Shown piece after piece: positions 2,424 through 57,885 of a stretch of 64,000 bases of DNA; within the stretch, counting starts at the first letter, position 1; every line of letters begins with the position of its first letter. Under the pieces are notes generated by a model. The model was not told the origin of the DNA. It ran no database searches and worked only from the letters and a program-made list of their open reading frames with translations. Source of the DNA: Monocercomonoides exilis PA203 (lineage: Eukaryota > Protista > Preaxostyla); NCBI GenBank assembly GCA_001643675.2, contig LSRY02000027.1, positions 496,001 to 560,000 on the forward strand, read 5' to 3'. The translations under genes were made by a program, and so were the position numbers.

Positions 2424-5400
2424 ATGAGATTCTTAAACACAATTCATTGTTTTGCAACTTTGCATTTAGCTTCATTTTTTTTCTGTGTAGATGGTGACCA
2501 ACTTTTCCCAACAAATGACTTATTTAGGTTATGTGGAGATAAAAAATCAAATGCCTGCGACAAAGGTGTGAATTTAGCAATCAATAATAATTTCGATTTG
2601 AAAAAAGTTATTATTATTTTCTCTATCATTATTATTATTGTTTTCATTATTATTATTTTTATTGTTTTCTTCCATTATTCTCAGATCGTTTCGAAATCGG
2701 ATTCAAAAATGCTCTTCTCACACATTTTGTTGAAAGCAATTCCTCGTTGGTAATATCATGTTCAGAACTTTATCATTGCTCTGACAATCCTATTTTTAGA
2801 TGTAAGAGTTTATCGGCCGTTGAAATTTTTGGTTGTTTAATTTGTTTCAAGGAATTTTCCTCTTCATGCCCAATATCTTTGACTGAAAGCACAGCTTCTT
2901 TATCCAATATCAGCCTTTACTGTGATGTACCAACGTTTATTGTTCCCCCTTTTCTGGAATCCAATTTGTCAACTTCTCAATTTGCTTGCTGTGGATTGTT
3001 GACAATGTTTCATTGTTCGTTTTCCTCAATGATGATTTCGTCTTTGCCATTTCTTTTTTCAGAAGCAGTATCTCACGTCTCTGCTATGCATTCTTCTTTT
3101 GAGAACATTTCTTATTTCAAAACAGAGAGACAATCTCGAAATCGTTTCACGGCATCAACAGCTCATCATTACACAACAATCTCCAGCTGCTCGTTTTTTT
3201 CAGTCAATGATGTGTATGATGGTGGACTGTTTCATTCCATAAATTGCCCTTGCTCATCTTTGTCTTCGTTGAATAACACTTTCATATCTTGCAACCGTTT
3301 GTCAAATGTTCGTTATTCTGGAACTGAAGAAAACCCATTATCTCTTGAAAGGACAGTTATTGAGACTGCAGGAGAGCATTTGTTTGTTTGGTGTGAATGG
3401 AAAAATGCGTCACCAAATGGATTTGGAGGTGCTATCTACATATCACACGGCGGATCATCAATAAATGTTTCTCATTGCTTATTCAATGACATTAACAGCA
3501 CAAATGATCAAGCAAACAATCATGGAGGTGCAATATTTATTGCAAATTTGGTAAATGCACTTGTTGATTCATCAAATTTTAGTAAGTGTTGTGCAAATCA
3601 AGGAGGGGCAATGTGCAGCGTTGATCATGTGAAAAATGAGCAATGCAAAGATCTTGTTTTTGAAAATTGTTCCATTTCAAGTGAATATGGGATGGTGTGC
3701 TACTTGCGCCCTCAATATCTTCAAGAATCAGGAACATTCATTTTCTCAAATTGTCGATTTGTGAAGAATTCGGCCGGAGATTCTGCAGGATGCATGTATT
3801 TTAGTTATTATTTACCAGATATCAGCTCCTCAACGTTTTTAATCACCGAAAACGTGTTTCTGTTTAATTTATTAAATGGAACAAGCACAAGTGTAAGTCG
3901 TTACGGAGGAACTGGAATGAATTTTGATGGGCTTTCAGAACAGGCTGCAAGAATATCCTTCATTAAATTTTGTTTTTTCCACCAAAACAAAGCAAACAAT
4001 GGAATGGGAAATGATGTGAGAATAAATGGAGGCAAAGTGACTTCAAATCCTTTTTTTGAATCATATTCAACAACAACAGAAAAGCGAGTGTGGTACAACG
4101 GCACGTCGGATAGCGAAGAATATAATGGATGGCTTCCAGTGGGGATATTTTTACTGACTCGATATACTCATCAAAATGGAAATGATTTGGATGAGCTTTG
4201 TGGGTTGAACGACACAACACCCTGCAGAACAATAGAACATGTTTTCGGAAAATTGAGAAACGATGTTGAGTGCAAAGTAATACTGCTTGAATCATCTTTT
4301 TCTCCCTCTTCTGTGCTATTCATCAACAGCAATAAAGTCAAAGTGATTGGTAATGGAACAGACAAATCAGTCGTAAGAACAAGCATGCTGTCAAACTCTG
4401 CAGCCCTGTTTTCAATTAATGCCGGAGATTTAAGTATATTTTCTTTGGAGATTGATCACAACACTGCAATAGAAACTATTGAACTATTATCTGTTTCTGG
4501 TTCATCTGGGAAGGCTCACCTGAAGCATCTTCTCATCACTTCTACAAGGGCTCAGCCCACTTCTTTTAACAAGCCTTTGTTTGATATTGCTTTCGGAAGC
4601 ATTTCAATTGATTCCTGTATTGTGTCTTCTTTGAGAACAAGCACTCAGCTCATAAGGGCTCCAATTTCATCTTTTTCTGAAATTTCTAACACTAACCTCA
4701 CAGAGGTCATTCGAAGCTCAGGAAATGGAGGAGTGATTGAATGCAATCCGATAAATACGGAGTCATTAACATTGAACAACATCTCGTTTTCCGGGTGCAA
4801 ATGTGAAAGTGGAAATGGAGGATGCATTTCCATTATAATGCAACCTGGCTCAAAAGCGAGACTTGGAGAAATTGATTCGCTGACTTTTGCTGACTGTTGT
4901 GCACAGGGAGCAGGAAGCAACGGATACGGGGGTGCAATTTTCCTGAAATTGGAAAATTCAGCCAATGATTTTGTCTTTGACAAGATGACATTCACCAACT
5001 GCCGTGCTTCGCAATTCGGCAACAACATTTTTATTGAGGTAGCGAATTTCAGCCAAGTGATCAATGCAGATCGGTTGAAGTTCAGCCCTCAACTGAATGT
5101 GCTCACTGATCTGTGCGGATACGAAAATAACAATCACTCATTTGCGATTCCTCTTGTTCTTTATCTCCGAAGCAAACCGACCGAGTTTTATGTTGGAAAT
5201 ACGAATAAAAGAGATTGGCATATGTGTGGATTTGCTGACGAGCAATGCTCAACTGTTGATTATGTTCTCTTGCAACACAAAACATCAAGCGGAGTGTCAA
5301 TTGCTGTTGATGGCAGTTCCACTCTTTCACGAGAGATATCTCTGTCTGAAGGAACCACAAGTGTTCGAGGGATTAGAGCTCAGACACAGCTCATCGTAAA

Positions 5401-8400
5401 CGATAATTCGACAAAAAATCAAGATGGGATGATTATCAGCAGTGCAATAACTTCTTTTTCGAGCATCAAGTTTTATCTGCCAAGCTCGCTCTCTGGAAGA
5501 GAAGCACTGTTTCTGGTGCAGTCAGGATCCTTCTTGTCTGAGCAGTGTGCGCTGATGCTTATGTCAAGCACAACATTATCTTACAGTTTTATTATTTGCA
5601 TGGGTGGAACAAGCGCAGTGAAATCGCTTGTGGTGAAAGGATTCAAATTTACAGAAGCACCTCTGATGATTTCATGCACGAACGGGCAGCTTAACACTGA
5701 GTTATGCAACATTTCGAATACAACTTCCGCATCAAATGAAGGAATAATTGAATGCACAAACGGAGGTTCACTGACTCTTCAGAATTCGACAATGGAAGGA
5801 ATTGTATGTGACAACAAGGCAGCTATAACGATTGAAAATGGAAAAACAGTGAAAGTGGAAAAAATCAACATGAAATCCATTGAACTCGCAAATGGAAATG
5901 GAAGCGCAATGAATATTGTGATGAATACAGGAAATGTTGTTGAGATTAGAGAGTCAACATTTTACAACTGTTTGGCTCACTCGGGTTGTGGAGGAGGGAT
6001 ATATGCTTCGTTTGTTGGAAGCGGAAAGCTGAGCATCGGAAAAGATGGAACATTCACATCGTTTTCAAAGTGTGGAGCAAGTGATACAAGAACTCAATGC
6101 GGATACGGGGGAGGGCTGTTTGTGAAGGCTGCTGGTCAGTTCAATGATTATTATATATCTTCAATCAGCTTTACGAGCAGTGTTGAAAAAAACCATGCGA
6201 CGAAAGGAGGAAACAACATGTTTTTTGATGAAGCGAATTTGGCAGATTTGATGAATTCTGGAAAAGTGGATGTGACGATCTCGACAAATGCAGCAGAATA
6301 CGATGATGCAATGGGCTTCGAAAATGGGGATACGGATTATGCAATTCCACTGGCTCTGTATTTCATTGCTCCCTTTCCTTTGCCAGCACTCGTTGGAGGA
6401 AACAACACAAGAGATTTCAGTGGATGTGGCCACTCGGGCTATCCTTGCTCAACAATCGCATTCACAGTCGATCTTCGTTTTTCTTCATTGGACAAAGACA
6501 TTTTGCTTGATCCTTCATTTATTTGGAGCGAAGAGACAGAAATGAATGTTTGCGAATGGAAAGTGAAATGCGCCCAAAAGAACACAAGAATTGCTGTTTC
6601 TCCACCACCTCCAACAGATTCATCTTCTTTAATAACAGTCACTCAGCCAGCGACAATAACGAATATCACTTTTGTTTTGTCATTATCGCTCAACTCCAGA
6701 ACATCTTTGATTCAGTGCAACGGAAATAGCCTTACATTAAACAGTTGCGGATTTTCGATAACTTATTCAGAAGAAAACAACGAAATCAATTTCATCTTTG
6801 CAAAAATAATCGGAGGAACATTTGTTGCAAATGATTTTGTTGTTGCAGAAACAAATAAAATTGTGTTTTCAGAGAGTCCGTTTTTGTTTGAGGGAGGAAG
6901 TTCGTTCACGATGCAGAGCTGCGAATTCAACGGAATAACAGTGAAGAACGGAAATGGTGGATTGTTAAGTGCATATGGAAATAGAGGAAGCTGTGAGATT
7001 GTGATTGACGGATGCCAGATAAGTTCATCATGTAAAGACGGAAACGAGCTGAAAGGAGGAGCTTTGTTTATCCAGAAACAGGGGAATATGGATGTTACTG
7101 TGAATAACACAAGATTCAGCAGTTGTAATGTGCCAAACAGCGAAGAATCAAACAGTGGAAGAGGATTAGGAGGAGGGATATATTTGAATGTTTCAGATAA
7201 TAATGGAGTTTATTCACTGAAAAATCTGACATTCTTTGAGTGCAAAGCGTGGAAAGGAAACAACATATTTGTGGATGCCATCAACTTAACTGAAGCAGTT
7301 CGAACAGATAACTTCCAAATTGCTTGGAGAGAGATGGAAAAAACGGATTTGATGGGACATGAGCGAGTCTCCTGCAATCGAGATTATGCGATTCCTTTGG
7401 CTGCATTTCTGACTTCATTTTCTGGAAGTGGATATGTTGGAGGCGAGTCAGATGGAGGATACGATCACTCGGGATGCGGATTTTCATTTGCGCCTTGTCA
7501 TTCAATCAGCAAAGTTGTTGAATTGAGATTTGGATCAGCGCAAGAGCAAGGTACTGTTGTGGTTCTTCCATCGTTCCAGCTGGACAGCTGCACAAGGCTT
7601 GCCTCATGTTATGTTTCAATTTTTGCAACAACAAAAGGCACATCAATTTTTGTCTGCAGCAACGCAAGCGCCGATGGTGACGGCTTAATCGAAACAGCAA
7701 CAGAAGTGTCGATTTCGAATATCACTTTTTCAATGCCTTCAAGCTTCGTTGAAGCACCTCGATTATGTCTGATTCTGTGCCAACAATCAACTTTAAGAGT
7801 TTCAAATTGCTCGGTGACAAGGCAAATAGAACGCGAGGCAATTCAATTCAGCATTCTTTGTGCAACAGGAGGCGAAATTCATTTAACTGAATTTGAGCTG
7901 AAAAGAATTGATTTTGGAGAAGTTACAGCAGTCGAGCTGAGCGGACAAGGAACATCTTTATTTGTAGTAGGATGCACTTTTGAAGCGGTTGAGAGTCTGT
8001 CACATGATGGACTGATTCACTTGACTGGTGAATCTTCAGCCGACATCAAGAAGCTAACAGTCAATAGCTCAGCACTAGAAAGTGGCAGTGTTATTTCTTT
8101 TGGGGAAGGAAATGGAATGAAAATTGCATCAAGCGAATTGTCGAACGTGACTCGAAACAACGGGAATGGCTCAGTCTTTTCAGGCGTTATTGGGCAAGGA
8201 AAGCGAGTGGAGATCAGCAACTGTGTGTTTTCAAAAGATATGTGCCAAGGAGAGGTTCCGTTTGGCGGGATGGGGGCATTGAATGTGTCGGATGGAGGAG
8301 AGCTGATTTTCACTCAGAATAGAGTGGAGAGCTGCACAGCACTGGGAGCACAGGGATATGGAGGAGGGCTGCACCTGAAATTCGATGCAAATGCACAGTA

Positions 8401-11400
8401 TTCTATGAAGTCAAACACTTTCACAGGAAATCTTGCTTCAAAGGGAAACGACTTATTACTGCTTTGCGGGAATCCAGAAACGCTGATCAAAGAAGATCTG
8501 TGGTTTGGGACAATCGACGAGCTGAACACGCCTGAGCCAAATTTCTGGGTTATGGACTCGGTCGAAAGCACAGAAATTGATTACTCGATCAAGAAATATC
8601 TGTTTTCTGGAACAGGAGATATCATCTTTGTTGAGGCAGGAAAAAGCACTTTGCCGAACTGTGGAAGCGATGCGAATCCATGCGATCGATTGGAAGTTGG
8701 TGTTGGCAACCTGAAAGAGAACCAAACGACTGTCCAGATCAATAACCACAATTGGGTTTCTGGAGAGATGAGAAGAGATGGTAAATCGCTCACAATCCGC
8801 GGAGTTGCTTCTAAATCAGAACTGAGAATAGAAAGCAACGGTTTCTTCAATGTGGTTGATGATATTACACCAACAGAACTACTGCTCAACAGACTTATTT
8901 TCAAACTACCAATCTCACCGGTAGAAGGCAACGCTGGGGTTATTCAGATGAATGGCGGACGAGTGACAATATTGAATTGTGAATTTGGAGGAAGCGATGG
9001 CTCTGTAGAAGCTGGAAAGCTTTGGATCGTTGTTGGAGGAGGAGGAGAGGCGCATCTTGAGAGTGTATCATTTTCTTATCAGACTTTTCTATTGAGCTTC
9101 GGAATTGCTCGTTTGGAGAGAGGGAAAATGTCCATCAACAATCTGAATGCGTCTCACATAACATCTGAAGGAGATGGATTGATCAAGAAAATTGAAGGTG
9201 AAAGCTTTGAAGCTAAGGCAGCAAATATCACCGATTGCTCCGCTTCTAATGGAGGGATATTTATTCTGAAGAATGTGGAGCAGGCATCAATTTCTGGAGG
9301 ATGCGAGTTTTTGAGATGCAAATCGAACAACAGCGATGGAGGTGTTGCCAAATGTGAGCTTGCCTTCGAGAACAGATTTGATATGGAAAACGTTGTAATC
9401 AGTGAATGTGAAGCCAATGAGACAAGCGGAAGAGGAGGAGGCATTTTTCTTTATTCGAGTGACGATTCCACAAACAACTTCAAATTGGGAGAGATGGAGT
9501 TCATGGAAAATAATGCTTGGTGCGGGAGGGATTTGTTTGTCAGTTGTTCTGATCTGAACCAAACAGTGAGCAAGAGTCGCTTCATCTATAACTTATATGG
9601 CGAAAATGAGGTGTCTGCAGTGGATATGAAAGGCATTGACAAAAGATTTGATGGCGAAGCAATTGATCTACTTCTATTTCTGGTGAAATACGAATCGGAT
9701 GAAGTGTTTATCGATAAAAATGGCTTTGATATGATTGGATGTGGCAGTTTGAACTTTCCCTGCTCGTCTTTTTGGAGAGGTGTGAAAAACGCTAATTTGA
9801 ATTCTTCAAATAGAATTATATGGATTTGCTCAAACGCAATCATTCAAGACGAATTTGATTTATCAAATTTCGAAGTCAAGTCCTCTGTCCCTGAAGAGCA
9901 CGCAAAGTTTGATTTTGCTTCTGAAATACTTGGTTCCGGCTCTTTTTCTGCAATCATCACAAATTCGAAGAATCTTCAATTTTTCCTTGTTGATTTCGTG
10001 TTGCCGTTGGGATTCAACACCAATCGAAAAGTTCTAGTTTCATCTTTCTCTGAAAATGGTGTGCTGCATTTGACTGATTGTGCATTTTCCACAAAGGAAC
10101 AAGACACGCTTTCATATTCTCTGATTTCTGCAAGTGGAGGAACATTTACGCTGATTCGTTGTTCAATTGAAGATGTGAAGTTTGATTTCACACCAATTTC
10201 TGCTTCTTCTTCGGCTGTAATTGAAGCATGCAATATTTCTGGGGCAAAAACAGAGAATGGGGCAGAAGGTGGAGCTCTTCGAATCTCGTTGAAAGCAGAG
10301 CAGCAATTGATGATCAACAAAACAATAGGAAAAAATTGTGAATGCTCACAGACAATTGGAAAAGGTGGGTTTCTTTTTGTAGATAGCACGGATTCAGAAA
10401 GCACCGCTCCTTTTGTTTTTGATGCAATCACTTTGGAAGTCAATGAGGCGAAAATTGGGGAGCATATTTACATTTTGTCGAATGATTTGAATGCAACAGT
10501 CAAATCATCTTCATTTATATTTGATTATTCTTCAATGGAAAATTCATCAAATCTGTTCGTAGGGAGTGACGATACATTTAACAGCACCAACCTTTTCAGA
10601 TTTCTTGAGGGTTATTCGAATTCCCAAATATATGTCTCTTCACTTGGCTTTGATGTGAAGAGGTGTGGAAGTGCAGACGATCCATGCTTTTCTTTCTGGA
10701 AAGGGATGCAGCAGATTGATGGAAGCGAGACAAAAAAGGAGATAATAATTCACGACACGACAGTTTTGAAGGACAGCTTTGTTCTTTCCGACTTCAAGAT
10801 ATGCTCTGGAACAACATCTGAAGTGGAAGCCAGCCATTCGACGTTGGCAGTTAGCCAAGAAGAACCAGCGGAAGGAAAAGGATTGATCAGAAACAATAAG
10901 GCTCTGACATTTTCGTGGATAATTCTATCAGTGGAGTTTATACATGAAAATGGAGAAGAAACCATTGTGAAAAACGAAGATGGAACTTTAACGTTTGAAG
11001 AGTGCTGGTTTTCTTCAACAAGCACGGACAATATGGCACAAAACTATGTGTTTGTGGAAATGGGGAAAGGGGTGCTGATTGTTGATAGCCTGAATGTTGA
11101 AAGGATCCACACGAAGCGAGGCGTATTTGATGTGTTTGGCAAATGTGAATGCAAAATGAACAAAATGAATGTTCTTTCATCCACAATTGAGAGCGGAAGC
11201 ATAATTAACGTGAAGAATGCAGCAGAAACTACAAGACTCAATATGAAAACAATAATAAATATAAATGAATCGACATTCTTTTCTGTTTCAAGGAAGGATG
11301 ATGGATCGTGTGTTAGCAGCAGCAATTGCAGCAGAAAAAGTGTTGAAATGATTGTGAAAAATTCGTCAATCGAGTCGTGCAAAGCTCTTTCGTCTGAGAA

Positions 11401-14400
11401 AGGCGGTTCTCTTTTCTTTTTGCAGAGTTCGGATGGATCGCTGAAAGTGGAAGATTCACGAATAGCGCAATGCTCTTGTTCTGTTGCGAGTGGAAGAGGA
11501 GGCGGAGCATATTTGGAGTGTGAGGAAAGAGGAGAATTGTATTTTCTTTTCAAAAATATCACATTTTCTGGCAATGAGGCTTTTGTTGGCCGAGACATTT
11601 TCATTGAATGCACAAACATCTCGAACCAAATCAACGAGACACAGTTTGCAATGGATTTGAGGGCGGACTCTTTTATTCGCCTGAATGCGATTTATGGGAT
11701 TGATCCAACACTCTCCGAGCCAGTTGATTTGATCGACCTGATTACAATCTATCAGGCAAGCACGATTGTTATCTCGAACATGTTTGGGAAAGGAGGAGCA
11801 AATTATCGGCAGTGCGGAACGAACACTCGTCCTTGCCTGTCTGCTGGATATGGCATTGGTCACCTTGTGGGAGACTTCCTGAAGGTGGTAGCCATTGATG
11901 AACAAAGTGAGATTGAGAAGGAAATTGAGATAAATGATATAACCATCCAATCGAAGAGTTTCATAAAAGCTAAGCTAATTGCTTTATCTGCTATTCCTGC
12001 TATTGAAACTGCTTTGGTCAAAGCCAAAGGAAGAAATCGTCTGGAATCAATTGAGTTCCTGTTTGTGGAATCATTTTCATCTAATCACGAGGCGATTCTG
12101 GAAATTGATGAAGGCAGCATGCTGATCGTCGATGTTGCGTTTAAGCCGGAGAATTTCAATACAAAAGCTTCTTTTAATGAGCTCTTCCGGATGGAAGGCG
12201 GAATGCTGTTGATCAGCCAAGTTTCAGTCGAAAGAATTGATGCAAAGACTTTGTGCACATTCAAAAGAGGAACATGCCAATTTCGATCAGTTTTCATTAT
12301 TAATGTGGTGTCGCTTCGAGATCTGTTTGTTGTGTTGTGCGAAAACATCTCGATGAAGGAAGTGACGATCAGCAATACAACAAGTCAGATGAACATCTTC
12401 AGCTTTGATGGAACTGAGAACAAAGAGCAGAACATCTCAATGAGTGCTTCTTTATCCGAATGTTTAATTTTGAATGTTTCATGCAAAGGAGAGACGCCAA
12501 TTGTTTGTATCATCAATAGGAGAAATGTGAATATCTCAAATTGTGAAATAGGCAATTCCTCGTCAAATGTTGAGAAAGGAAATATGATATCTTTTCTGTT
12601 TTGCTCAAATGTTTTTTTTAATTCCTGCAGTTTCAGTGGAAATTTTCAAAATTCAAAAGAAAATCACATCAATACCACATTGATAGAGATCTGCAAATGG
12701 AATGGATCGCTTGTGGATGTTGCAAAGAGCAACGTAAGAATGAAAGATACCACAATGTGTAATTCGAAAGTTGGGGGGTTGTCTGTCCGTGGAGGAAGTG
12801 TGGAAATTGAAGATTGCAAGTTTGAGAACAACAACCCATCCATTGAAAAATATCTATCAATCAGAAGAAATATTCTCTGCTCGGATTCGGGAATGGTGAA
12901 TGTTGTCAGCTTGAAAGGAGGAGATGGATTGAAGGATAACACATCACTGTGGATTCTGGATGAGGGATGCACATTGGAGGGGATTGCAGGAGAGAGACCT
13001 TCTGCGCTGTTTATCCCTGTGCTGGAGTCGGCAGAGATGGGCAGAGGAGGAGAGAAGATAAGTCTGAGTGTGCGCGGAAAGTTGTTGGTGCCATGCAATC
13101 TGTCGGTGAGAGTGTGCTTCAGAGACGGGAGCGAAGAGCATATCGAGGGTCATGAGATCGAGGAAGATGGATATGTGGGGGAGAATGAAATCCAAACAAC
13201 CATTCTGTCGGCACAGCTGGCAGCGGTGGGTGCAGAGACAGAAGTGTCAGTGTGCATTCTGTTTGGCAGGAAAGATGCTCCTTCATCGACCGGGGCATTC
13301 ATCCTGAAGAACAGAAGTGAAACCCAAGGAAACAGCGATGAAAGAATTGCCGAAGGAGGGAAAGAAGGAAAATCACTTTGGCCAATCATCGTGATCATTA
13401 TGGCAATAATTCTCATGATCGTGATTATTGCATCTGTTGTTGTGACCATCCGATGGAGAAAGCAAAAGAGAAGAACCGAAGAGTTAGAAGAGATTGTGAA
13501 CGATAACATCAGAAAGGATCCGAAGGCATTTGAAATGGTGACGATGGAGATGTCACCCGAGGAGCAGTGGAAGAGAGCAGAGAGGGAAGCAGAGAAGAAG
13601 AATGAAGAAAAGATAAAGAAAAGAGTGTATGAGAAAAGCTTGGGGCACTCCGAGTCATCAGAGCATTTGCTGAGCGAGTGTGGCTCAACTGAATACATTC
13701 TTGGAAGAGATTCTGACAAGATCCCAGAATGGGCACTGGAAAAGGTTGAAGAAGAAGAGATTCGAAAGAGATCACCATCTCCGTCAATTTCTTCCACTTC
13801 CACCACAGACACTTCAGACACAGAATCCACATTTGTTCGCGGAGAGGATCTGTGTCCAACCACCTCATCCATGTCGAACTTAGTGGATGCGATGGCATGC
13901 TCATCCCCTCATGAAAAGCTTATTGTGGACTTGAGGGATTCTCTGTTCATGCTGCTTCATGGAAAGAACAAGACAAAGGAGATGGCGATTGGAAGTCTTC
14001 AGGAGAGGGAGATGACAGCTGCACAGATCCTGTTCTGGGTGGCGAATGGGGCGCTCCACGCCTTTGAGGACGAGGAAGATGACCTCCCTCTTTGGCCAAT
14101 CTGAGCCCGCACATTGTGCTCTTCTCTGAGCACATGGTCATCTGCATTGCCCTCCACTCCGACTGCTCCTCAGACTCAGACTCATCATCCGTCTCTTCAC
14201 TGACCATTGTTTCTTCCTCCTCCAACATTTCGGTGCTGAGCGAGAGATTCACCGACTCGCCTCCTCCTTCGTCAGCATTCGAAGATGAAGATAGCTTCAA
14301 AAAGGAGTGTCTGAGATGGAAGGCGCCTGAATTGCAGATGAACAAGAAGCTGGAGGCAACAGAGAAGTCGGTGGCGTTCTCGATCGGGATGATGCTGTGG

Positions 14401-15705: not shown

Positions 15706-15742
15706 TGCAAACAGAGCACACAGCACAAAAGAACACATGCCA

Positions 15743-15780
15743 AAAGCAAGAATCAAAGCAAGAATCAAAGCAAGAATCAA
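15743..15780. repeat. 12-bp tandem repeat (aaagcaagaatc) x3
   Basis: Directly visible. Confidence 0.9.

Positions 15781-27063: not shown

Positions 27064-27068
<5 letters not shown>

Positions 27069-27099
<31 letters not shown>
27069..27099. repeat. poly(T) tract (poly(A) on minus strand)
   Basis: Directly visible. Confidence 0.95.
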
Positions 27100-45653: not shown

Positions 45654-45671
45654 ACGGGTTAGATCAATATT

Positions 45672-48600: not shown

Positions 48601-51600
48601 CGCAATTGAAGATAAATTCTGTGTATTTGCTGCGGCAGTTTGAAAAAGAGGAATTCGTCTTTATTCGAATGAAGGAAAAAGGGCACATAGAAATTAGCGA
48701 CTGCACGATCCAATCACGACATCCCGACTCAGTTGCGTCGAATGACTACTCTCTGATGAACACGTTTCTGCTGACGACGGAAGGAACTGTATCGATCAGC
48801 CGGACAACATTTAAAGACATGAGCCTGCGCAACTGGAGAGGAGCAACGCTTGTGTTCCTCCACCACACACAGTCTGTGCTTCTCGAGAACATCACATTCA
48901 GCAGCGTCCATAAGAAGCACAAGCCCACAACGCCGCTGAAGGAAGAAGAGAAAAATGCGAAATATCATTACGACGAGACTGGCATAAGCAACTCTCCTTG
49001 CTTTGGATCGGCATCGTCTCCTTGTGTTTGTGTTCAGTCGTCTTCTGCTGCCATCAATTTGACACTCGAAAGATGCAATTTCTCTTCGGCCGGTGTTGTT
49101 TTGCAGACAGTTCAAAACCAGTCTGAGATGCAGGCAATTCTGAAGGAAGAAGAAAAGGAAAGGCAAGCAAAATGGAAGCAGGAAGAAGAGAAGAGGAAGA
49201 AACCAATTTCTGAAGAAGAGAAAGAGAGAGAAAGAGAACTGGCAAAATCTCAGCGGATTGATGAGCGAAGATTGAGAATAAGCAAAGGGGCTGTTTTCAT
49301 TGAGCTGCCTCGCAGCGAGTCGCCAGTCAAAATTTCCAACTGCAATTTTTACAACTGCTTTACACAGCAGCAGGCGGTGATTAATGTTCCGGAGGTTCCT
49401 CAGATTTCGTTGCCATGGAGATGGGTCGTGGGAGGTGGAAGCGGAGGAGCAGTCACATTTAGCGGGCCTTTTAAAACGGAAGTTCGTAATTCGATCTTTC
49501 GGAATTGTGAGGCATCAATCACAGGAGGCGGTGTTTTCTTGCAGAACAATGCTGATGTGCTTCTTCAAAACTGTGAATTTAACTCATGCTACCTAAATCT
49601 TCCGTATTCTTCTTCTGAGACAACAGATAAAGATAAGGAATCAGGCGATGTGGAAGAGACGAGAGGAGGTGCAATATATGCTACGAAAAGTAGACTTACG
49701 TGCACAGAAGTGAAGTTTTCTAATTGCGCATGCAGTTCGAGTGGTGGAGCGATATGCACAGAGCTTTGCCAACAGTTTGACTTGAAGGGCTGCAACTTCG
49801 CTACATGCAAATCAGGTAACTTTTCAAATGCGGCAGCGAAGACTGAGGAGCAGTTGCAAACAGCATTCGGAGGAGCGATAAGTTGCTTGAGCAGTATGAG
49901 TAATGGGCCTCATTTCGAGAACTGTGTGTTTGACGGATGCTTAAGCATGAATTTTGGTGGATCAATATTCTTTGGCCAAAGCAAGTCAACTCTTGCAGAA
50001 GATGAAAGGCGTATGAGCAAAGTTTTGGAGACATTGCACAAAGAGGAAGCCGATCTGGAGGAGAAAGGAATGTTCAAAAAAGAAGCGGAAAAGGCAGCAT
50101 GGAGAATCCGGAGAAAGGATGAGCTGATGATGGAGTTGGAAAGCCAACGCCCAAACGGGGGAGTGATAAAAAATTGCATATTCAAAAACTCTTCCACAGG
50201 TAATTTGCTGAATGGAAGAGGGGGAGCTATCTTCATTGAAAAGACTCAGATTCCGAAGTTTGAGAATGTTAGGATGCAGGACAACCTGGCAGGAATTTCT
50301 TTGATGCGACAGCAAAGCGCGTTTGGAGGAAACGACATATTTAACAGCGAGTGGCACCATGCAGCGATGTTGCGGAAGACTCAGAAAAGGAATGCGTCTG
50401 AAGAACAAAAGGAAAAAGAGGCAAAAGACGACTCTTCAGTGTTCTTTACAGGGTGCAAATCAAGTTCTCCTTCGCCTCATTTTTGCGTGGGTATTCTGGA
50501 CGAAGACATCAGCCACACTTTGATAAAAGCTTCTGATGTAAGCTGTGTTGCGTTTGAAGAAGATGCTGAAATGATAAAGAAGGGAATAATGGTGAAAGAC
50601 TCAATTTGCTATGAAGCACAGCAAGCATTTATTGATCCTCAAAATAAAGATAGCAAAGATGAGTATGGTTGCGTGAAATTGTCTCAAGACGATGCCAAAA
50701 TTGAAACAGAACGCGAAATCAAAAGCTGCCATACAATTGCCTTTGCTGTCAAGCAAGTTTCCGCAATCGGAGATCTGTTTGTGAACAAAGGAATTGTTGA
50801 AGAAGCAGATATTCTTGTGAAGAGTAAGTCCGTATCAATTTCTGGAAATGTGGAACGGAGAAATGAAGTTGTTTTTAGTCTGCCAAAAAAGATCAGCGAA
50901 TCATATAACAATCAATTGTCTTATATTTTGTGCATCGAAGAAGGAAAATTGACAGTAACGAAGATATCCTTTGTTCATCAGAATGATATGGAACTCAAAG
51001 AAGCAGCGATTGTCGCCAAAGAGAAATCAGCTCTGGCTTTGGTAGATGTCGAAGTTTTGAATGAAATGCCTTCGTCGAATGTTCTTAGAAACTTTAACGG
51101 AAGAAAAAACAAACTTATCGAATCTGGAACTCCATTTGTGCTTGCTTCAGATGTATTTGATTTAAGCATATCTACACTGATAATGGGAGGCATCACTTAC
51201 AAAGAGCAGCCATCTTCCTCGTTTGGGCAACTTTCTTCATCAAAAAATATTTTGTCTCAGAATGCTTCTTTTTCACCATGCGCAATTTTTGTATTTGGAG
51301 CTGAATCTGTTGATATATCAAATTGTCTTGTTTCGAATATTAAAGCAATATCACAAACTTCCATTCCTCCATCACCTAAGTACAATGAAGCAGAAGCAGA
51401 GCATTATCAATCAGCATCAGTGTTCACTTTACACAGTGTTGGCTTTATTAAGATTTCTTTGTCATCATTCAATAGCTGCTGGACTGAGACCAATGAAAAA
51501 TCAAACGAAAAAGATTCTGAAGTTGTGAAAGATGCATTCATTTCTTCAAAGCAGCTTTCAAATGCTCCATCATCAACACTTCCTTTCAACAAAAACGGAG

Positions 51601-54600
51601 GAGGAGTGATCCGAATTGAAAGCGGAGGCTTAAATGCAGCTGAAGCACTCAAAATTGACAAAGAAAAACATATTTCTAAATCAATATCTATTTCTTCTTG
51701 CCACTTTGAGAATTGCTCATCGAATTCGAAAGAGGCAAAAGGAGGAAGCGTTTTGGTTGTTTTCCCATCTGTTCCACAGGCTGGTCAAACAGCCAACACC
51801 AATTTTGGATTAGACAACTCTTTCGGTCTTGTTCAAAATGCAGATAGTTTCTCTTTGCTTGTGAAGGTGAACATTCTTTCATGCAATTTCATCTCTTCAT
51901 CAGCTGAAAACGGAGGTGCACTGGCAATTTTGAACGAAAATGCGAACATCCGATTGATTGTGTCCAATTCTCGTTTTGCTCGCTGCAAATCGACCGCAAA
52001 AGAAGGTTCATATTCTCAATTCAGTGCGAATGACAAAGAAGCCACTCCAGAATTGAAAACTCCTTTTGGAGGCGGGGCGTTGTTTTTGTACAATTGCGAA
52101 TTGAATATGTCCACATCTTCAATTTCAGGATGCACTTCAGACATGTCCGGAGGAGCCATCTTGATAAACGGGCAATATGCGACTCTGTCTGAATGGCACA
52201 GAACATTCAGCCAGTCGATTTTGGTGCTGAGCAACGTTGAATTCAGAAAGTGCAGATCGAAAGGAGACGGAGGAGCAATATTCATTGATTCACGAAAGGT
52301 GTATAACATTTCTGACAGCAGCTTTATTAACTGCAAAGCGGAAGGCAACGGACGAGGCGGAGCTGTGTATACCGGAGTTAAGACTTGCTCATATTCGATG
52401 TTTAACAATTGTAGATTTAGAAACAATACTGCAGATTTCTCTTCTCTCGGGGAAAATACACAAAAGGGAGGAAATGATGTCTTTGATGACTGTCCGAATC
52501 ATAAAAAGTTTTGGAACAAAAACAACATTCGGAATTGCACTTCCACATCTGAGCAACCTTCATTTGTCATTCCAGGAGGATCAGTCGAAGGCGTGATTTG
52601 GAGAGAAATGAAAAAGGAAGAATTTGAAGCAGAAAGATTGGAAGAAGAAAAAATTAGCATTGAAGAAAAGAAGGAAGAGGAAAAGAGAGAAGAAGAAAAG
52701 AAGGAAGTAAAGAAGGAAGAAGAGAAGAAAGAGATTATGCGTTGTATTGTTGGAGATGACTCAACAAAAGATGTCAAAGGAAAAGACGAAGCAGGTTGTG
52801 GGTCAGAGAAACAGCCTTGCGGATCTCTCTCTTATGCATTGAAAGACATGCTTGAAGAAGTCAAATCAAAGAAAAAACCAGAAAAAATTATTCTGTTTTT
52901 GATGAATGGGGTGTTGAAGGACGAGTCTTGTGCTTTGCTGATTGTTCCACCAAGTGAGCTGTGTTCTCACTGTTCCAATGATCAGCCTACGCAAATAACA
53001 GTTTATGGTGATTCAAACAGCGAGTTGTTATCGTCAAAGAGAATAGAAAAACAAGAAGCATTGATTTGCATACAAAAAGAAGCGAAAGTTCTTATGCATC
53101 ATCTCACATTCAACAGAGGGTTTTCTGGAAATGGCTTCTCATTCCTTCAATTGACAGAAAACAGTGAATTAACAATTATGGACTGCAACGTAACTGTGCC
53201 TGCTAATAAACTATTATTTGATGGAATGCAAATGAACATTAACGAGCACATTGAAAATACTCCTCCTCTTTGCAATGTATTTCTAAGCGCTTCATCTGGG
53301 TCAGCTGTAATTGAGAAGTGCAATTTTGAGCAATGTCAGGTTGCAAGTCGATGCGGTGGATGCATTTGTATCAGAAATACTTCTTCTCTTTCTGTATCAA
53401 ACTCAGTATTTCGAAAAATGAAAGTGATAGCATCGCAAGATCCAATAATGCAGAACAAGGATACAGATGCTGTTTGTGGAAGCTTCATTGATATTAAAAC
53501 AGCACAAAGCAGTTCTCACAAAATATTCAATTGCATTTTTAAAGAATTTGTTTCAACTAACACAGCATGCGGAGCCGTTCGATGCGAAGCTGTTAATCCC
53601 TCTAAAGTGAGTGTGTCTTATTCTCAGCTTGGTTCTTCATCAAATAACGTACAATTAGATAATGCGGAAGATACAAACATATTCGTTAATGTCGACAAAT
53701 GCTTTTTCAGCAATTGCTTCGGAGCTTCTCAACAACCCATGGAAGTATTATTTGATCAAAATATGGAAATAAAATCTGAAGAGAATTTTGCAAACTCTTA
53801 TAAAAACGCTATCAAATGTGGGAGCGGAGGTGTTGCGCTTTCTCTTTTTGGGCAATTTAAGGCAGTGATCAACGAAGGAACATTCAGTGAATGCTACTCA
53901 TCAATGACTGGTGGAGCAATAAACATAACTAAAGCCAATGTTCTCATTTCTTCTGCGAAATTTATAAAGTGCAGAGTGCTATCAAGGCCTCTCGGAAATG
54001 GTGCAGCTGATATATCAACACATATTAAAAATGACAATGAAGATCCTTTCTGGTCCACATATGGAGGTGCAATCCACATTTTCAAAGGTTATCTTTTGAT
54101 TGAGAGATCATCCTTCGATAAATGCTCTTCGTCTTCTATTGGAGGAGCCTTATCCGCTGAATCGTCTTCGATAGTCATCTCAACGACTGAATTCACATCT
54201 TGCGTCGCAGGAGAATTCAGCACAGCACAAGTGGAGTCTTTATCCTCAAAGCCAAAAACCTACTCTCTTGGAATAGGTGGAGGAGTTTATGCTTTGCTTT
54301 GCGCTGTGAATATTTCGAAATGCTGCTTTTATAGTTGTGATTCATTTCTTGGAGGTGGTGCTTTGTTTTTGAGTGGGTGCATGAATGGTGTGGAGGCTGT
54401 TGACTGTGAATTGACAAATTGCCATGCATATGGAAAGCTGATATCCTGCGGAGGAGCCATTTTCCTCAACGGCTCTTCGCCTTTAAAGATGAAGAATTGC
54501 TCATTCAGTAACAATTCTGCTTCTGGAACATCTAAACATGGCAAGCCCTGCTTGCTTAAAGGCAACGATGTTTGCGACTGTGATGTTACTCATTCAACTT

Positions 54601-57600
54601 CATACTTAAAGAATGGCATTGTATCTGGTTGTAATTCTTCTTCTTCGAAACCTCGCTTTACTTTAATTGAATTTGACTGGAGCTTTATAACTGCTGCTGA
54701 AAAGGATGCTGAGTCTTTTGATTGCAGTGTTGGAGAAGATATCAGCTCTTGTGTATTTGATGGCGATTGCAAGAAAAAGGATATGATTCTTGACTTTGCA
54801 ATTGTTGCTGTTTCGGATAAAGATGCATCTGACAGTGCAAAATGTTTATCCCCTAGCGAAAAGATATTCGATGAGCAGTCGAAAAAAGAGAACCCAGATA
54901 AATGCCGAACATTGAGCTTTGTTCTTAAGCATAAGAGCGATTCTTCTGTGATTTCTGTGAAAAAAGGAAAAGTTCTTGAGACAGATCTCGTAATTGAAAC
55001 AAAGACAGTAACTATTACAGGAACTAAAGATTCTTCAGAAGTCATATTTGCATTACCCAAAAAAAGAAGGTCAAACGAAATCAAATGTAAATTATGTATT
55101 TAAAGTGACAGATGGATTGCTCAGTGTTGCTTCATGCTCATTCTATCATCAAAAAGCCAATGAGACTCAAATTGCCTATTTTGTTGTAGAAAAACTTGGA
55201 TCATTATCTCTTGCTCAGTGTATTGTTGATTCAGACATTCAAGATCCAAAAGGTAACTCTTATTCAGAAACACCATTTATTTATGCTTCTCAGAGTTCAT
55301 CTTTAACATTTTTCTTTGTTGCTGCGCAGAACTTATGGTACAAATCGAACATAACAAAGAAAATTAATAAAGAAGAGCAAAGAAAGTGCTTTGGAACATT
55401 TGCTCTAATAAAGAATGCTGACAATGTTCTTATTCTTAACTCAACATTCACAAATATTTCACAAAAGTCTACTGATTCTGATAATTCATTTGAAAACGAA
55501 GAAAATGCTGCTGAATCAGAGGCATCTGTGTTTTGTGTTCAATTGAAATCAAAAACGTCGATGACAATACAAAACTCCAAATTTGTGAACTGCAGTTCAA
55601 AGTCAAGTAGAAGTGTAGCAGGCGCTGTTAGTGTTCGCCCTGAAAGTGTATCTTCCATTGAAAAGTTTCCATATGTTATAATCAAAGAATCTTCATTTAT
55701 TTATTGTGCTTGCCTTAATGGCGAATATCCTCAAGCAGTACAAATAAATAATTGCAATGTTTCCATCACTGCATCAATGTTTGATGGGAAAATGGCTAAT
55801 GAAGCAGGAGGTGCATTTAGCGATATTAATACAGACAATACTAATCCAATATGCTCTTGGAGTGGCAGTCAGCTCCAGTTGATTAATTCTACAACTGGTA
55901 TTACTAATAGTACGATAAAGAATTCTGCTGCTGGAGGAATATCTATCATTGGAGGCTCGCTAACGACGACTAATATCAGCATGATTGATAATGCTCCATC
56001 AACTTTTGAAGCGAAGAACCTGTTTCCATCTGCCCGCAGGAATATCAATTGCGAATCAAAAGGGACTGTTAACATAAAGCAAGAGGAGAAAAAGGTATCA
56101 GCCCAGCAAACGAAACAGATTGGATCTCTTTCTTCAGATGAACTGTGGATTTACAGCGATGGAACATGCCAATTTGGAGGACTTTTGGAGTCTGTTGTTT
56201 CTACTCTATTTGTTCCTGAAGTGGATTCTGCATTCTGTGAGGTTGAAAAGAAGAAAACATTAGAAAGTGGAAACGAGGATGATGCGATGGTGACTGTAAC
56301 AGGGAAAAGGTTTTATCCTTGTGACGTTTCAGCTATTATCACTTCTGCAAATGAACAAAGCATTACAAAGCAGTTAACCGTGCTAAATGAGACAACTGCT
56401 CGTTTCCCTATTTCATTGAAATATATTACTGAGCATCCAACTGTATCTGTTGCAATCCAGTTTGGAAATAAAGTCAAACTTTCAACCAAATCAGTAACTA
56501 TCGTTGTTAAAGAAAAAGTTGAGCCAGTTACGCCTACTCCCCCTCCAACTCCTCCTCCTACACCAACTCCTCCTCCACCAACACCTCCTCCACCAACACC
56601 TCCTCCAACGCCTACGCCTACGCCAGAGCCAGAACCTACACCTGAACCAACACCCACGCCTGAACCGACTCCAACACCTGAACCTACACCAGAACCTATA
56701 CCAGAACCAACTCCTGATCCGACACCTACACCTGCACCCACACCTACACCTGCACCCACACCTACACCTGAGCCAATTCCTTTCCCTGATCAACCGTCAG
56801 ATTCGAGTTCATTTTCTTGGATTGGAGCTATCATAATTGCGGTAATAGTTATTGTTGGATTAATTGTTGGATTGATTGTATTGATAATTCAATTACTTAT
56901 CCGAAGAAGCAGAGCCAACAAAAAGAGAAGAAGGGCAAGCTCACATGCTAAAGAAGAAGATGCTGATGAGGATCGCTTACTAAACTATGAATTGAAGGAA
57001 GAAGAAGAAGAAGAGCAAGATGAGGGATTGGATTTGGGTGTTAAAGAAGAAGATGCTCATCTGTTTGAAGACGATGCATTGATGCCAGCTGATGAATTGA
57101 AAGTGGATAAAGCTAACGCAAATGTAACTCCAACATTAACACAAAATTTTGAACAGACATCGAGCTTGCTTCTCAAAAATGAGGAAAACACACAAGAAAA
57201 TGTTCCAGTCGAATTCATACCAGCAATGTCAACAAATGCTCCTTTTAACACGTATGCTGTAAGACCTCAATTAACTCTGACTCACCGATTGGAAGAAATG
57301 AAATCGAGGGACTCAGCAAAAAGTGAGGGGCAGTCAGATGTGACAGCGCAAAATGATTATGCTTTTGTTTCTGCTGTTTTGCAATCAATTTTGAGAGGTT
57401 TGCGCCATCTGCATTTGAAGGCACCTCCAACTTATGTTGGCGATCTTTCACCGTATAATATTCTTATTGATGAAAATGACACTGTTCTGTTATCATCACA
57501 TCTCAATCGACAGCTCGTCAGCATTTCAGATGACTCAAAAAGCTTGTGGATTGGAGGAGAGAAGAATAGACGATATGTTGCTCCAGAGATATTGTCTTTG

Positions 57601-57885
57601 ATTAAATCAAATGAGGATGCAAAATTAGTCACAAAGGAAGAAAATGAGTCAAAGCAACGAACAGTTATCTACAATAACGGATCTGTTGCAAGCGATGTGT
57701 ATTCTTTTGGAATGATTTTAATGGAAATGGTTACATTTTACAAGACTCTTCATTCTTCTCAGACAGAAGCGGTTGCTATAAAAAGAATGGAATCAATAGC
57801 GATTGACTGCACATCACCTGCCCCTTCAAATCGTCCTTCAGTTGTTCAACTTATTGAAATATTTAAAGATTTGTGCACAAATTAA
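45672..57885 (+). CDS. Giant (~4050 aa) type-I receptor-like protein: signal peptide, about 5 CG...C/GGA beta-helix modules, Pro/Thr stalk, TM, C-terminal pseudokinase; 1-nt frameshift at A7 run 55059-55065
   Basis: Exon 1 45672-45930; phase-1 intron 45931-45984 (GTTTGA...AAACAG) in frame with ORF 46023. More than 20 GGAI/GGAL/GGAV motifs. ORF 55048 continues the module, then TM ~56818-56900 and motifs GDLSPYNILI, YVAPE, SDVYSFGMIL, NRPS. Confidence 0.8.
56527..56787 (+). repeat. Coding Pro/Thr/Glu tandem repeat (PT, PEPT) mucin-like stalk
   Basis: TPTPPPTPPP...PEPTPEPTP...PAPTPTP directly before the TM. Confidence 0.9.

What the first reader, a model, noticed from the sequence alone, without database searches (positions are those of the whole stretch)
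2424..57885. Candidate undescribed system: a modular family of Pmp-like beta-helix surface receptors with variable module number
Seen: four dispersed genes (2424-14793, 28173-33085, 34305-37256, 45672-57885) make up about half the window. They share a grammar: signal peptide, then N modules each opened by a D...CGxxxxPCx(T/S) motif and filled with GG(A/G)(I/L/V)(Y/F) and FxxC/FxxN repeats, then one TM. N is about 8, 1, 2 and 5. In gene 1 the modules are spaced ~920-1200 nt and end in 'GxN/DIF...IPL/IDL'. Known: GGA(I/L/V)+FxxN repeats mark the right-handed beta-helix of Chlamydia polymorphic membrane adhesins and pectin-lyase-like folds. Inference: this is an expanded, diversifying receptor/adhesin repertoire, possibly for recognising gut bacteria or host glycans, that couples a bacterial-adhesin-like ectodomain to eukaryotic signalling tails.
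Basis: partly seen in the sequence, partly recalled or inferred. Interest (0 to 1): 0.8.

Follow-up and report, generated by a model that had tools for sequence, protein, structure and literature searches.

The report
Modular beta-helix surface receptor genes
Four genes in this stretch of the gut protist Monocercomonoides exilis encode membrane proteins whose outer part is a chain of one to nine bacterial-style beta-helix domains; they belong to a huge family, published only as "tyrosine kinases", that may help this bacteria-eating cell recognise or hold bacteria, though no function has been tested.

Summary
The four genes (50.7% of the window) share one plan: signal-peptide exon, N modules opened by a CGxxxxPC motif, a conserved membrane-proximal domain and one TM. 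The motif occurs 12 times, all in these genes; shuffles give 0.07.

Gene 1's seven central modules (308-400 aa) align in register. One folds confidently as a complete right-handed parallel beta-helix (VIA-align Z 22.5).

The membrane-proximal domain is the end of a beta-helix plus an IPT/TIG-like Ig domain. It occurs once per protein, with 1445 first-look candidates in the genome.

Tails differ. Genes 1 and 4 carry a catalytically dead kinase C-lobe remnant, gene 3 a conserved 15-aa KKRRQYxxI tail, and gene 2 is unresolved. Genes 1 and 4 each carry a one-base frameshift.

"Pmp-like" holds for the fold and rung motifs but not for family membership. "Diversifying" is not shown (dN/dS 0.16-0.35). 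Module number does change by in-register recombination.

All 20 strong hits I looked up are oxymonad proteins (Monocercomonoides, Blattamonas, Streblomastix). The literature knows the family only as "tyrosine kinases". This scan has found the family before on other DNA of this genome. Function and expression were not tested.

The parts
2424..2565 (+). Gene 1 exon 1: signal peptide and first opener (CGDKKSNAC variant)
   Evidence: ATG ORF. The exon ends one base into a codon (phase 1), before a GT.
2566..2684 (+). Gene 1 intron (inferred): 119 nt, GT..AG, phase 1
   Evidence: Frame continuity between the exon-1 frame and ORF 2591-14101. Not checked with RNA.
2685..4138 (+). Gene 1 head module M0, the most divergent part among paralogues
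   Evidence: Only weak matches to the C-half of the module HMM. pN is 0.19-0.30 and pS is saturated against paralogues.
4139..11752 (+). Gene 1 canonical modules M1-M7. Boundaries: 4139, 5165, 6365, 7415, 8600, 9680, 10604.
   Evidence: In-register alignment A1; pairwise E 1e-7 to 1e-22. AF2 model of M3 has pLDDT 85; beta-helix at Z 22.5.
11753..12643 (+). Gene 1 M8: an opener plus the N-half of a module
   Evidence: HMM positions 5-267, E 6e-11. M7 against M8: E 4e-7.
12644..13366 (+). Gene 1 membrane-proximal domain: the last beta-helix turns plus an IPT/TIG-like Ig domain
   Evidence: Alignments A3 and A4. AF2 pLDDT 89.6. VIA-align Z 9.5-7.9 to Rel/plexin/Met IPT domains over residues 123-225.
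13367..13459 (+). Gene 1 transmembrane helix
   Evidence: Hydrophobic stretch at aa 3541-3571.
13460..14793 (+). Gene 1 cytoplasmic tail. One base is missing at about 14086 relative to 8 paralogues. The kinase C-lobe remnant lies at 14296-14583.
   Evidence: PF07714 positions 163-257 of 258, 28.2 bits. Frameshift shown by alignment with paralogues. dN/dS 0.07-0.09 upstream of the break.
28173..28290 (+). Gene 2 exon 1 (signal peptide, no opener); inferred phase-1 intron at 28291-28450
   Evidence: Sequence and frames. Not checked with RNA.
28451..31569 (+). Gene 2 main exon: head, one opener at about 29350, membrane-proximal domain 30619-31446, TM 31453-31512, 18-aa tail if the stop at 31567-31569 is used
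   Evidence: The head gives a sub-threshold Chlam_PMP match of 18.1 bits. No paralogue at E 1e-10.
31658..33085 (+). Possible last exon of gene 2: a 475-aa K/S/E-rich tail. Alternatively a separate gene.
   Evidence: An in-frame GT..AG intron at 31561-31657 is possible. The ORF is unique in the genome. Unresolved without RNA.
34305..37256 (-). Gene 3: one uninterrupted 983-aa ORF. Openers at aa 128 and 494; module A 35832-36929; membrane-proximal domain 34452-35189; TM 34353-34439; tail RKKRRQYTTINDVKI.
   Evidence: At least 47 paralogues. The tail motif is conserved in 2-module and 3-module paralogues.
45672..45930 (+). Gene 4 exon 1: signal peptide and first opener (CGKDSSNPC); inferred phase-1 intron at 45931-45984
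   Evidence: Not checked with RNA.
45985..55103 (+). Gene 4 ectodomain: large modules of about 700-800 aa, with openers at about 48192, 50649, 52785 and 54822
   Evidence: Modules are related to each other at E 1e-6 to 9e-22. Pfam Beta_helix scores 38.4 bits at 49326-49811.
55048..57885 (+). Gene 4 downstream frame. The frameshift lies in an A-run at about 55056-55070. Then: membrane-proximal domain 55810-56487, Pro/Thr-rich linker about 56485-56808, TM 56809-56904, kinase-like remnant 57367-57801.
   Evidence: Pkinase positions 100-217 of 263, 27.8 bits, below the cut-off. Alignment to CTR1: the Asp of HRD is kept and DFG is lost. No close paralogue.

Best explanation
Shown. The four genes are members of an oxymonad-wide family of type I membrane proteins.
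- Outside the cell, each protein is a string of complete right-handed parallel beta-helix domains. Each domain starts with a Cys-Gly...Pro-Cys cap motif.
- The string ends in a final beta-helix cap plus an IPT/TIG-like Ig domain next to the single membrane helix.
- The N-terminal head and the membrane-proximal part are old and divergent between paralogues. The middle modules are kept alike by gene conversion.
- Modules are added or lost by in-register recombination.

Inferred. The head is the ligand-binding tip, held away from the membrane on a rod of modules of variable length. This bacterivorous cell uses the repertoire to recognise and hold bacteria or glycans.

Inferred. What happens inside depends on the tail.
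- Most members, including genes 1 and 4, carry a catalytically dead kinase C-lobe remnant. It is under strong purifying selection and would act as a docking scaffold.
- The gene 3 subfamily carries a short conserved KKRRQYxxI tail. It resembles a YxxPhi sorting signal and would send the receptor and its cargo into the endocytic or phagocytic pathway.
For: Architecture.
- Modules align in register.
- AF2 module model: pLDDT 85, pTM 0.88.
- All 50 best PDB matches are right-handed beta-helices, led by Z 22.5 at rmsd 2.9 A over 257 residues. ESM Atlas TM-scores are 0.65-0.75 to Beta_helix/DUF1565 proteins.
- Pfam Beta_helix scores 38.4 bits in gene 4.
- Membrane-proximal domain: model pLDDT 89.6, with IPT/TIG-like matches at Z 9.5-7.9. 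It occurs once per protein.
- Each protein has one TM.
- There are 9 to 65 N-glycosylation sequons per ectodomain.

No enzyme signature. The invariant module columns are only Cys and Gly, plus one near-invariant Asp in the cap motif.

Evolution.
- dN/dS is 0.16-0.35 outside and 0.07-0.09 in the cytoplasmic part.
- pS is mosaic (0.09-0.44) in M1-M7 and saturated (0.54-0.77) in the head and the stalk.
- One paralogue carries an in-register M3/M6 hybrid module.
- The gene 3 subfamily has 2-module and 3-module forms.
- Family proteins carry 0 to 19 full modules.

Tails.
- Pfam kinase matches cover only the C-lobe, in M. exilis and in Blattamonas.
- The stretch that aligns to the DFG and activation segment is Ser-rich filler.
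- The YxxPhi-type tail is conserved in 25 of 26 subfamily proteins that have a tail.

Biology. M. exilis feeds on bacteria by phagocytosis, and its prey selectivity is unknown (PMC12308965).
Against: - No expression, localisation or binding data were obtained.
- Genes 1 and 4 have frameshifts, and 7 of the 10 members of gene 1's subfamily, gene 1 included, have stops or frameshifts. Part of the repertoire is therefore dead or dying.
- No positive selection is seen at module scale.
- A YxxPhi motif is short and could be conserved for another reason.
- The fold is shared with enzymes and phage tailspikes as well as adhesins, so it does not by itself show binding.
Confidence: 0.5

Rival explanations
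1. A variant surface coat. The family would be a repertoire of interchangeable coat proteins, as Giardia VSPs or trypanosome VSGs are. One or a few would be expressed at a time, to escape host immunity or to protect the cell. Pseudogenes and fragments would serve as donors for gene conversion.
For: - Very large family.
- Many pseudogenes.
- A mosaic gene-conversion pattern.
- Divergent heads.
- Earlier notes of this scan describe arrays of head-only fragments (unchecked here).
Against: - The conserved cytoplasmic tails, 15 or about 420 aa long and with dN/dS 0.07-0.09, are not expected of a passive coat.
- The gene copies I looked at are scattered over many contigs, not gathered at a single site; whether they lie near chromosome ends was not checked.
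- No evidence for exclusive expression was obtainable.
Confidence: 0.2
2. Cell-surface carbohydrate-active enzymes. Each beta-helix module would be a polysaccharide lyase or hydrolase that digests bacterial capsules or mucus at the cell surface.
For: The best structural matches are PL6 alginate lyases, GH28 polygalacturonases and phage depolymerases.
Against: - No conserved acidic or basic residues in the helix body; the invariant columns are Cys and Gly only.
- No CAZy-type Pfam family is matched.
- Sequence identity to the enzymes is 6-14%.
Confidence: 0.05
3. Mostly decaying repeats. The family spread as repeated DNA (it overlaps the assembly's 'unclassified repeats'), and most copies, including genes 1 and 4, no longer make a functional protein.
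For: - Frameshifts in genes 1 and 4.
- Stops or frameshifts in 7 of the 10 members of gene 1's subfamily.
- Treitli 2021 reports overlap of the 'kinases' with unclassified repeats, which make up 35% of the assembly.
Against: - dN/dS is well below 1 over 3800 codons, including comparisons with the intact copies on C23 and C38.
- ORFs of about 1000 to 4000 aa stay open.
- The full architecture is conserved in Blattamonas.
- The single-base breaks lie in homopolymer-rich context and could be assembly errors.
Confidence: 0.15
4. Self or partner recognition. The receptors would mediate cell-cell contact between oxymonads, or attachment to the host gut wall or to ectosymbionts, rather than prey capture.
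For: - Same architecture evidence as the main explanation.
- Relatives occur in Streblomastix strix, which from my own knowledge carries ectosymbiotic bacteria.
Against: - M. exilis has no known symbionts (PMC12308965).
- A repertoire of over 1000 loci is large for self-recognition.
Confidence: 0.1

Closest known systems
Trichomonad Pmp-like surface proteins (TvPmp; Handrich et al. 2019, PMC6701047)
   Same: - Metamonad type I membrane proteins.
- A bacterial-type ectodomain with GGA/FxxN-style beta-helix rungs.
- A single C-terminal TM.
- Short tails with endocytic motifs in many members.
- An expanded family linked to adhesion.
   Different: - 48 genes in T. vaginalis, against hundreds to over a thousand loci here.
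- The ATPITK motif and NPx[YF] tails are absent here.
- The paper describes neither chains of complete capped beta-helix domains, nor an IPT-like membrane-proximal domain, nor a kinase-remnant tail.
Chlamydia polymorphic membrane proteins (Pmp autotransporters; PMC11166332, PMC10715098)
   Same: Right-handed beta-helix passenger whose coils carry GGA(I/L/V)- and FxxN-type motifs; an adhesin role.
   Different: - Pmps end in a Pmp middle domain and an outer-membrane beta-barrel. The proteins here end in an Ig-like domain, a TM helix and a cytoplasmic tail.
- Pfam Chlam_PMP reaches its cut-off nowhere in this window.
Bacterial and archaeal Beta_helix / DUF1565 / Pmp-repeat surface proteins, including methanogen adhesin-like proteins (PMC11532034)
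   Same: - Nearest relatives outside oxymonads by sequence and shape. Metagenome protein P0179 scores E 7e-7 and hhalign 87%. ESM Atlas gives TM 0.65-0.75 and feature score 0.95.
- A similar G-x-D...G....P..T-type N-terminal cap.
   Different: - Prokaryotic anchors (T9SS, LPXTG, S-layer) instead of a TM with a eukaryotic tail.
- Pfam DUF1565 matches only one place in the genome.
Entamoeba transmembrane kinases, and plexin/Met-type receptors
   Same: Works alike in outline: a large, variable ectodomain, one TM and a kinase-like tail that is often catalytically dead. Plexin and Met also place IPT domains next to the membrane. The Entamoeba comparison rests on my own knowledge.
   Different: The ectodomains are unrelated (Cys-rich repeats; Sema/PSI). 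Those tails are full kinase or GAP domains, whereas only about 100-120 residues of the kinase C-lobe are detectable here.

Membership tests
Right-handed parallel beta-helix superfamily (pectin-lyase-like; Pfam Beta_helix PF13229) | Right-handed three-faced parallel beta-helix fold | tested here: met
   AF2 model of gene 1 module M3 (pLDDT 85). All 50 top VIA-align hits have this fold, Z 22.5-16.3. Foldseek and ESM Atlas agree.
Right-handed parallel beta-helix superfamily (pectin-lyase-like; Pfam Beta_helix PF13229) | Sequence match to PF13229 above the gathering score | tested here: met
   Gene 4 piece 48900-50399: 38.4 bits against a cut-off of 25.9. 106 matches genome-wide. Genes 1, 2 and 3 do not reach it.
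Right-handed parallel beta-helix superfamily (pectin-lyase-like; Pfam Beta_helix PF13229) | Conserved catalytic residues of the enzyme families (PL/GH28/PME) | tested here: not met
   The invariant or near-invariant columns of 28 modules are Cys, Gly, Pro and Ala, plus one Asp in the cap motif. This bears on enzyme membership only, not on the fold.
DUF1565 (PF07602) beta-helix domains | N-terminal cap motif and match to the PF07602 profile | tested here: inconclusive
   Only one genome-wide match, 23.4 bits, and outside the window. ESM Atlas features give 0.95 and structural rows carry DUF1565. That the CG....PC opener corresponds to the cap motif is my inference.
Chlamydia Pmp autotransporters | Repeated GGA(I/L/V)/FxxN units matching PF02415 at its cut-off | tested here: not met
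   No match in the window in the genome scan. The best piecewise score is 18.1 bits against 20.6, in the gene 2 head. TIGR01376 does not match. GGx motifs themselves are enriched, 40 against 1.6 expected.
Chlamydia Pmp autotransporters | C-terminal Pmp middle domain and autotransporter beta-barrel | tested here: not met
   No such Pfam hits in any of the four proteins. The C-terminus is an Ig-like domain, a TM helix and a tail.
Trichomonad Pmp-like proteins | Conserved ATPITK motif before the TM | tested here: not met
   A regex search finds none in any of the four proteins. The feature is taken from PMC6701047.
Trichomonad Pmp-like proteins | Single C-terminal TM and a short tail with endocytic motifs | tested here: inconclusive
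   Each protein has one TM. Gene 3 has YTTI (YxxPhi) seven residues after the TM. There is no NPx[YF]. Genes 1 and 4 have long tails.
Protein kinases (TKL group), as the family is published | Complete kinase domain with an N-lobe (Gly-rich loop, VAIK Lys) | tested here: not met
   Pfam matches cover only profile positions 163-257 of 258 (gene 1), 100-217 of 263 (gene 4) and 161-257 in six other members.
Protein kinases (TKL group), as the family is published | Catalytic HRD Asp and DFG Asp | tested here: not met
   Gene 4 keeps the Asp of HRD (VGD) but has no DFG. In a typical member the stretch aligned to the DFG region is Ser-rich filler. Gene 1's LANLSPH in place of HRDLKPxN is my manual reading.

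The most novel reading that the evidence does not exclude
The family is a germline-encoded recognition repertoire of a phagotrophic protist. It comprises more than a thousand receptors assembled from shuffled bacterial-type beta-helix domains, with unique heads that discriminate among bacterial surfaces. It would be wired to uptake or signalling through two new kinds of tail: a free-standing kinase C-lobe scaffold and a YxxPhi sorting tail. That would make it a protist counterpart of the expanded LRR/TLR/RLK repertoires of plants and invertebrates, and the molecular basis of prey selectivity.
Probability: 0.25. Interest if true: 0.85.

Novelty: new variant of a known kind. Interest (0 to 1): 0.6.

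Why it matters
- M. exilis is the model eukaryote without mitochondria. Its largest gene family, and much of the 35% of its assembly called 'unclassified repeats', has been read only as 'tyrosine kinases' (PMC6759080, PMC8767320). The kinase part is a dead remnant, and the bulk of each protein is an undescribed chain of beta-helix domains, so the published reading needs changing.
- The family offers a concrete candidate for how a gut bacterivore chooses or holds its prey, which the latest paper on its culture calls unknown (PMC12308965).
- It is also a clear case of bacterial-type adhesin domains built into eukaryotic receptors, with module number changing by recombination.

Tried and rejected
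- Whole-protein Pfam and NCBIfam scans of the ectodomains gave nothing at E below 0.1. Only piecewise scans found Beta_helix.
- BLASTP of the whole proteins against themselves returned no off-diagonal hits. Cutting at the openers was needed.
- A profile search of PDB sequences with the module found nothing. Foldseek against the PDB gave only weak E-values, 7e-3 or worse. VIA-align gave the clear answer.
Expression, the introns and the two frameshifts stay unchecked.
- The supplementary tables of Karnkowska 2019 are not held. I could not confirm gene by gene that these loci are on the published kinase list.
The stalk alignment was therefore built from proteins already fetched, and no paralogue of gene 4 could be read across its frameshift.
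- An intron as the cause of gene 1's frame change is rejected. Only about 25 nt are open in both frames, and all 8 paralogues have one more base there.
- Enzyme function is rejected as the main reading because no catalytic residues are conserved.
- I never joined exons or read across a frameshift. All searches used single ORF pieces by reference.
Full report
**Source and setting.** The window is G000:C22:496001-560000 of an 82.3-Mb, 101-contig assembly. Protein searches return only 'MONOS_' proteins of Monocercomonoides exilis at up to 100% identity, so the organism is this oxymonad. This scan has met the same family many times on other DNA of this genome. I treated those notes as leads and re-tested what I use.

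**Observation.**
- The strict opener CG.{4,6}PC occurs 12 times in all six-frame ORFs. Every occurrence is in the sense frame of these genes. Shuffles give 0.066 on average and at most 2.
- GG-type rung motifs occur 40 times against 1.6 expected.
- Cutting gene 1 at the openers gives modules of 308-400 aa. M1-M7 match each other in register at 19-26% identity, with E-values from 1e-7 to 1e-22.
- M8 shares only the N-half of a module. The head M0 shares only weak C-half similarity.
- An HMM of M1-M7 finds gene 3's first module at full length (E 3.8e-16) and parts of genes 2 and 4 (E about 1e-5).
- Gene 4 has its own larger modules of about 700-800 aa. They are related to each other at E from 1e-6 to 9e-22.
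- Opener counts are 9, 1, 2 and 5.

**Gene models.** These rest on sequence only.
- Genes 1, 2 and 4 each have a short first exon with the signal peptide. A GT..AG intron of phase 1 follows: 2566-2684, 28291-28450 and 45931-45984.
- Gene 3 is a single ORF.
- Gene 2 may stop at 31569. It may instead splice (31561-31657) into a 475-aa low-complexity exon ending at 33085. Both pieces are unique in the genome, so paralogues cannot settle it.
- Gene 1 lacks one base at about 14086 compared with all 8 paralogues that cover that site.
- Gene 4 changes frame in an A-run at about 55056-55070.
- Either break could be a real lesion or a homopolymer error. Reads were not available.
- I searched every piece by reference. 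I never joined exons or read across a break.

**Fold of a module.** I aligned 28 modules from across the genome (A2).
- AlphaFold gave a confident model of gene 1 M3: pLDDT 85.1, pTM 0.88.
- VIA-align against 48,161 PDB chains gave only right-handed parallel beta-helices in the top 50. The best is a PL6 alginate lyase at Z 22.5, rmsd 2.9 A over 257 residues. GH28 enzymes, phage tailspikes, Rhombotarget A and the Vag8 passenger follow.
- Foldseek and the ESM Atlas agree.
- Each module is therefore one whole capped beta-helix domain.
- Invariant columns are Cys and Gly only, so I see no enzyme site.

**Relation to known families.**
- Pfam Beta_helix matches gene 4 at 38.4 bits when it is scanned in pieces. 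It matches more than 100 other places in the genome.
- Chlam_PMP reaches its cut-off at only 6 places in the genome, none in the window. Its best score in the window is 18.1 bits against 20.6.
- The module profile finds a metagenome 'predicted outer membrane repeat protein' carrying Beta_helix and Chlam_PMP at E 7e-7. hhalign gives 87% over the GG-rung half of the module.
- ESM Atlas features place DUF1565, Chlam_PMP and Beta_helix clusters next after the Preaxostyla cluster.
- I conclude that the modules descend from, or converge on, generic prokaryotic Pmp-repeat/Beta_helix surface domains.
- They are not Chlamydia Pmps: no barrel and no middle domain are present.
- They are not trichomonad Pmp-like proteins by that family's ATPITK hallmark.

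**Membrane-proximal domain.**
- All four proteins share a roughly 240-aa region before the TM.
- It occurs once per protein: 134 domains in 133 of the 180 proteins held.
- In the genome it has 1445 first-look candidates. All 150 that were scored have E of 4e-52 or lower.
- The AF2 model has pLDDT 89.6. It shows the last beta-helix turns followed by a beta-sandwich.
- The sandwich best matches IPT/TIG domains of Rel, NFAT, plexin, Met and EBF, at Z 9.5-7.9. That is a moderate match.

**Tails.**
- Gene 1: PF07714 positions 163-257 of 258.
- Gene 4: Pkinase positions 100-217 of 263, below the cut-off. HRD reads VGD and DFG is absent.
- Six other members and two Blattamonas proteins match only positions 153-258.
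- In a typical member the stretch aligned to the DFG region is Ser-rich filler. The best PDB hit is the ErbB3 kinase domain, which is known to be a pseudokinase (my knowledge, not a tool result).
- These tails cannot be active kinases. Yet the cytoplasmic part of gene 1 upstream of its break has dN/dS of 0.07-0.09.
- Gene 3 has a 15-aa tail, RKKRRQYTTINDVKI. The KKRRQYxxI core is kept in 25 of the 26 subfamily proteins with a tail, at 44-84% overall identity. It fits a YxxPhi sorting signal close to the membrane. That is an inference from general knowledge of such signals.

**Family size and evolution.**
- Gene 3 has at least 47 paralogues.
- Gene 1 has 9 collinear paralogues at 81-88% nucleotide identity.
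- Genes 2 and 4 have no close paralogue.
- In gene 1's subfamily, pS is 0.09-0.44 in M1-M7, in a patchwork that differs from paralogue to paralogue. It is saturated (0.54-0.77) in the head, stalk, TM and tail. This indicates gene conversion of the middle modules around old ends.
- dN/dS is 0.16-0.35 throughout the ectodomain, so diversifying selection is not shown.
- The C52 paralogue lacks window 6727-10077. Its junction joins M3 to M6 at the same module position, alignment columns 143 and 148. This makes a hybrid module and removes three module lengths.
- The gene 3 subfamily has 2-opener forms of about 990 aa and 3-opener forms of about 1350 aa.
- Across 133 proteins, full modules per protein range from 0 to 19.
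- Seven of the 10 members of gene 1's subfamily, gene 1 included, carry stops or frameshifts.

**Distribution.**
- The exhaustive profile search found 4746 cluster representatives at E of 1e-3 or lower, and 437 at 1e-30 or lower.
- All 20 strong hits I looked up are from M. exilis, Blattamonas nauphoetae or Streblomastix strix.
- Blattamonas proteins have the same membrane-proximal domain and kinase remnant. The architecture therefore predates the split of these genera.
- Hits beyond the best 150 could not be inspected. Presence in free-living Preaxostyla or in parabasalids is open.

**Literature.**
- Karnkowska et al. 2019 call protein tyrosine kinases the largest family: 332 members, 320 of them TKL.
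- Treitli et al. 2021 note that these 'kinases' overlap the unclassified repeats, which make up 35% of the assembly.
- Novak et al. 2023 do not treat them.
- No paper pairs Monocercomonoides with polymorphic membrane proteins. The one paper pairing it with 'surface protein' and 'gene family' is an unrelated review. None of the 15 papers listed for oxymonad combined with beta-helix, adhesin or Pmp terms mentions oxymonads.
- M. exilis is a phagotrophic bacterivore whose prey selectivity is unknown.

**Verdict.**
- The functional reading is inference. It holds that these are receptors or adhesins with a variable head on a modular rod, coupled to a scaffold tail or an endocytic tail.

Noticed in passing
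window 37763-40855 (+): A 1030-aa membrane protein with two Kelch beta-propellers (PF24681, E 8e-54; attractin/LZTR1-type) followed by ephrin-receptor-like/TNFR-like Cys-rich repeats and hydrophobic segments. It is a second, unrelated kind of surface receptor, lying between genes 3 and 4.
   Followed up: no
window 18751-25452 (-): A 2233-aa ORF rich in Ser, Gln and Pro, with long poly-Ser runs and no Pfam match. It sits in a stretch of GC 0.51 against 0.29-0.43 elsewhere in the window.
   Followed up: no
window ~14086 and ~55056-55070: Single-base frame breaks in genes 1 and 4, both in homopolymer-rich context (CCTCC-CTC; A-run). They may be real lesions or assembly errors. Gene 1's break would cut off only the kinase remnant and leave the ectodomain, the TM and about 215 aa of tail.
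   Followed up: partly
G000:C52:281500-295500 (L059 + L068): A paralogue of gene 1 with an open 2890-aa frame. It carries an in-register M3/M6 hybrid module and lacks three module lengths. This is a direct example of how module number changes.
   Followed up: yes
window ~56485-56808 (+): Gene 4 has a linker of about 100 aa made of (T/E)P repeats (PTPPPTPPP..., PEPTPEP...) between the Ig-like domain and the TM. The other three genes lack it. The reverse strand reads as a spurious Gly/Val ORF at 56313-56759.
   Followed up: no
window 2566-2684, 28291-28450, 45931-45984: All three inferred first introns are phase 1 and lie just after the signal-peptide exon. This suggests an old shared exon structure, or exon shuffling of the leader.
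   Followed up: partly
P0080, P0171, P0029, P0151 (Blattamonas nauphoetae): Blattamonas relatives reach 5000-6570 aa with up to 13 full modules. Their sources name them variously 'Adhesin-like', 'Protein kinase domain-containing', 'PPM-type phosphatase domain-containing' and 'trimeric autotransporter adhesin'. I saw only the kinase remnant in the two tails I scanned.
   Followed up: partly
G000:C22:489727-490431 (-), C22:609596-610288 (+), C22:620906-621613 (-): More family members, each with a membrane-proximal domain match (E 7e-91 to 2e-80), lie just outside the window on the same contig.
   Followed up: no
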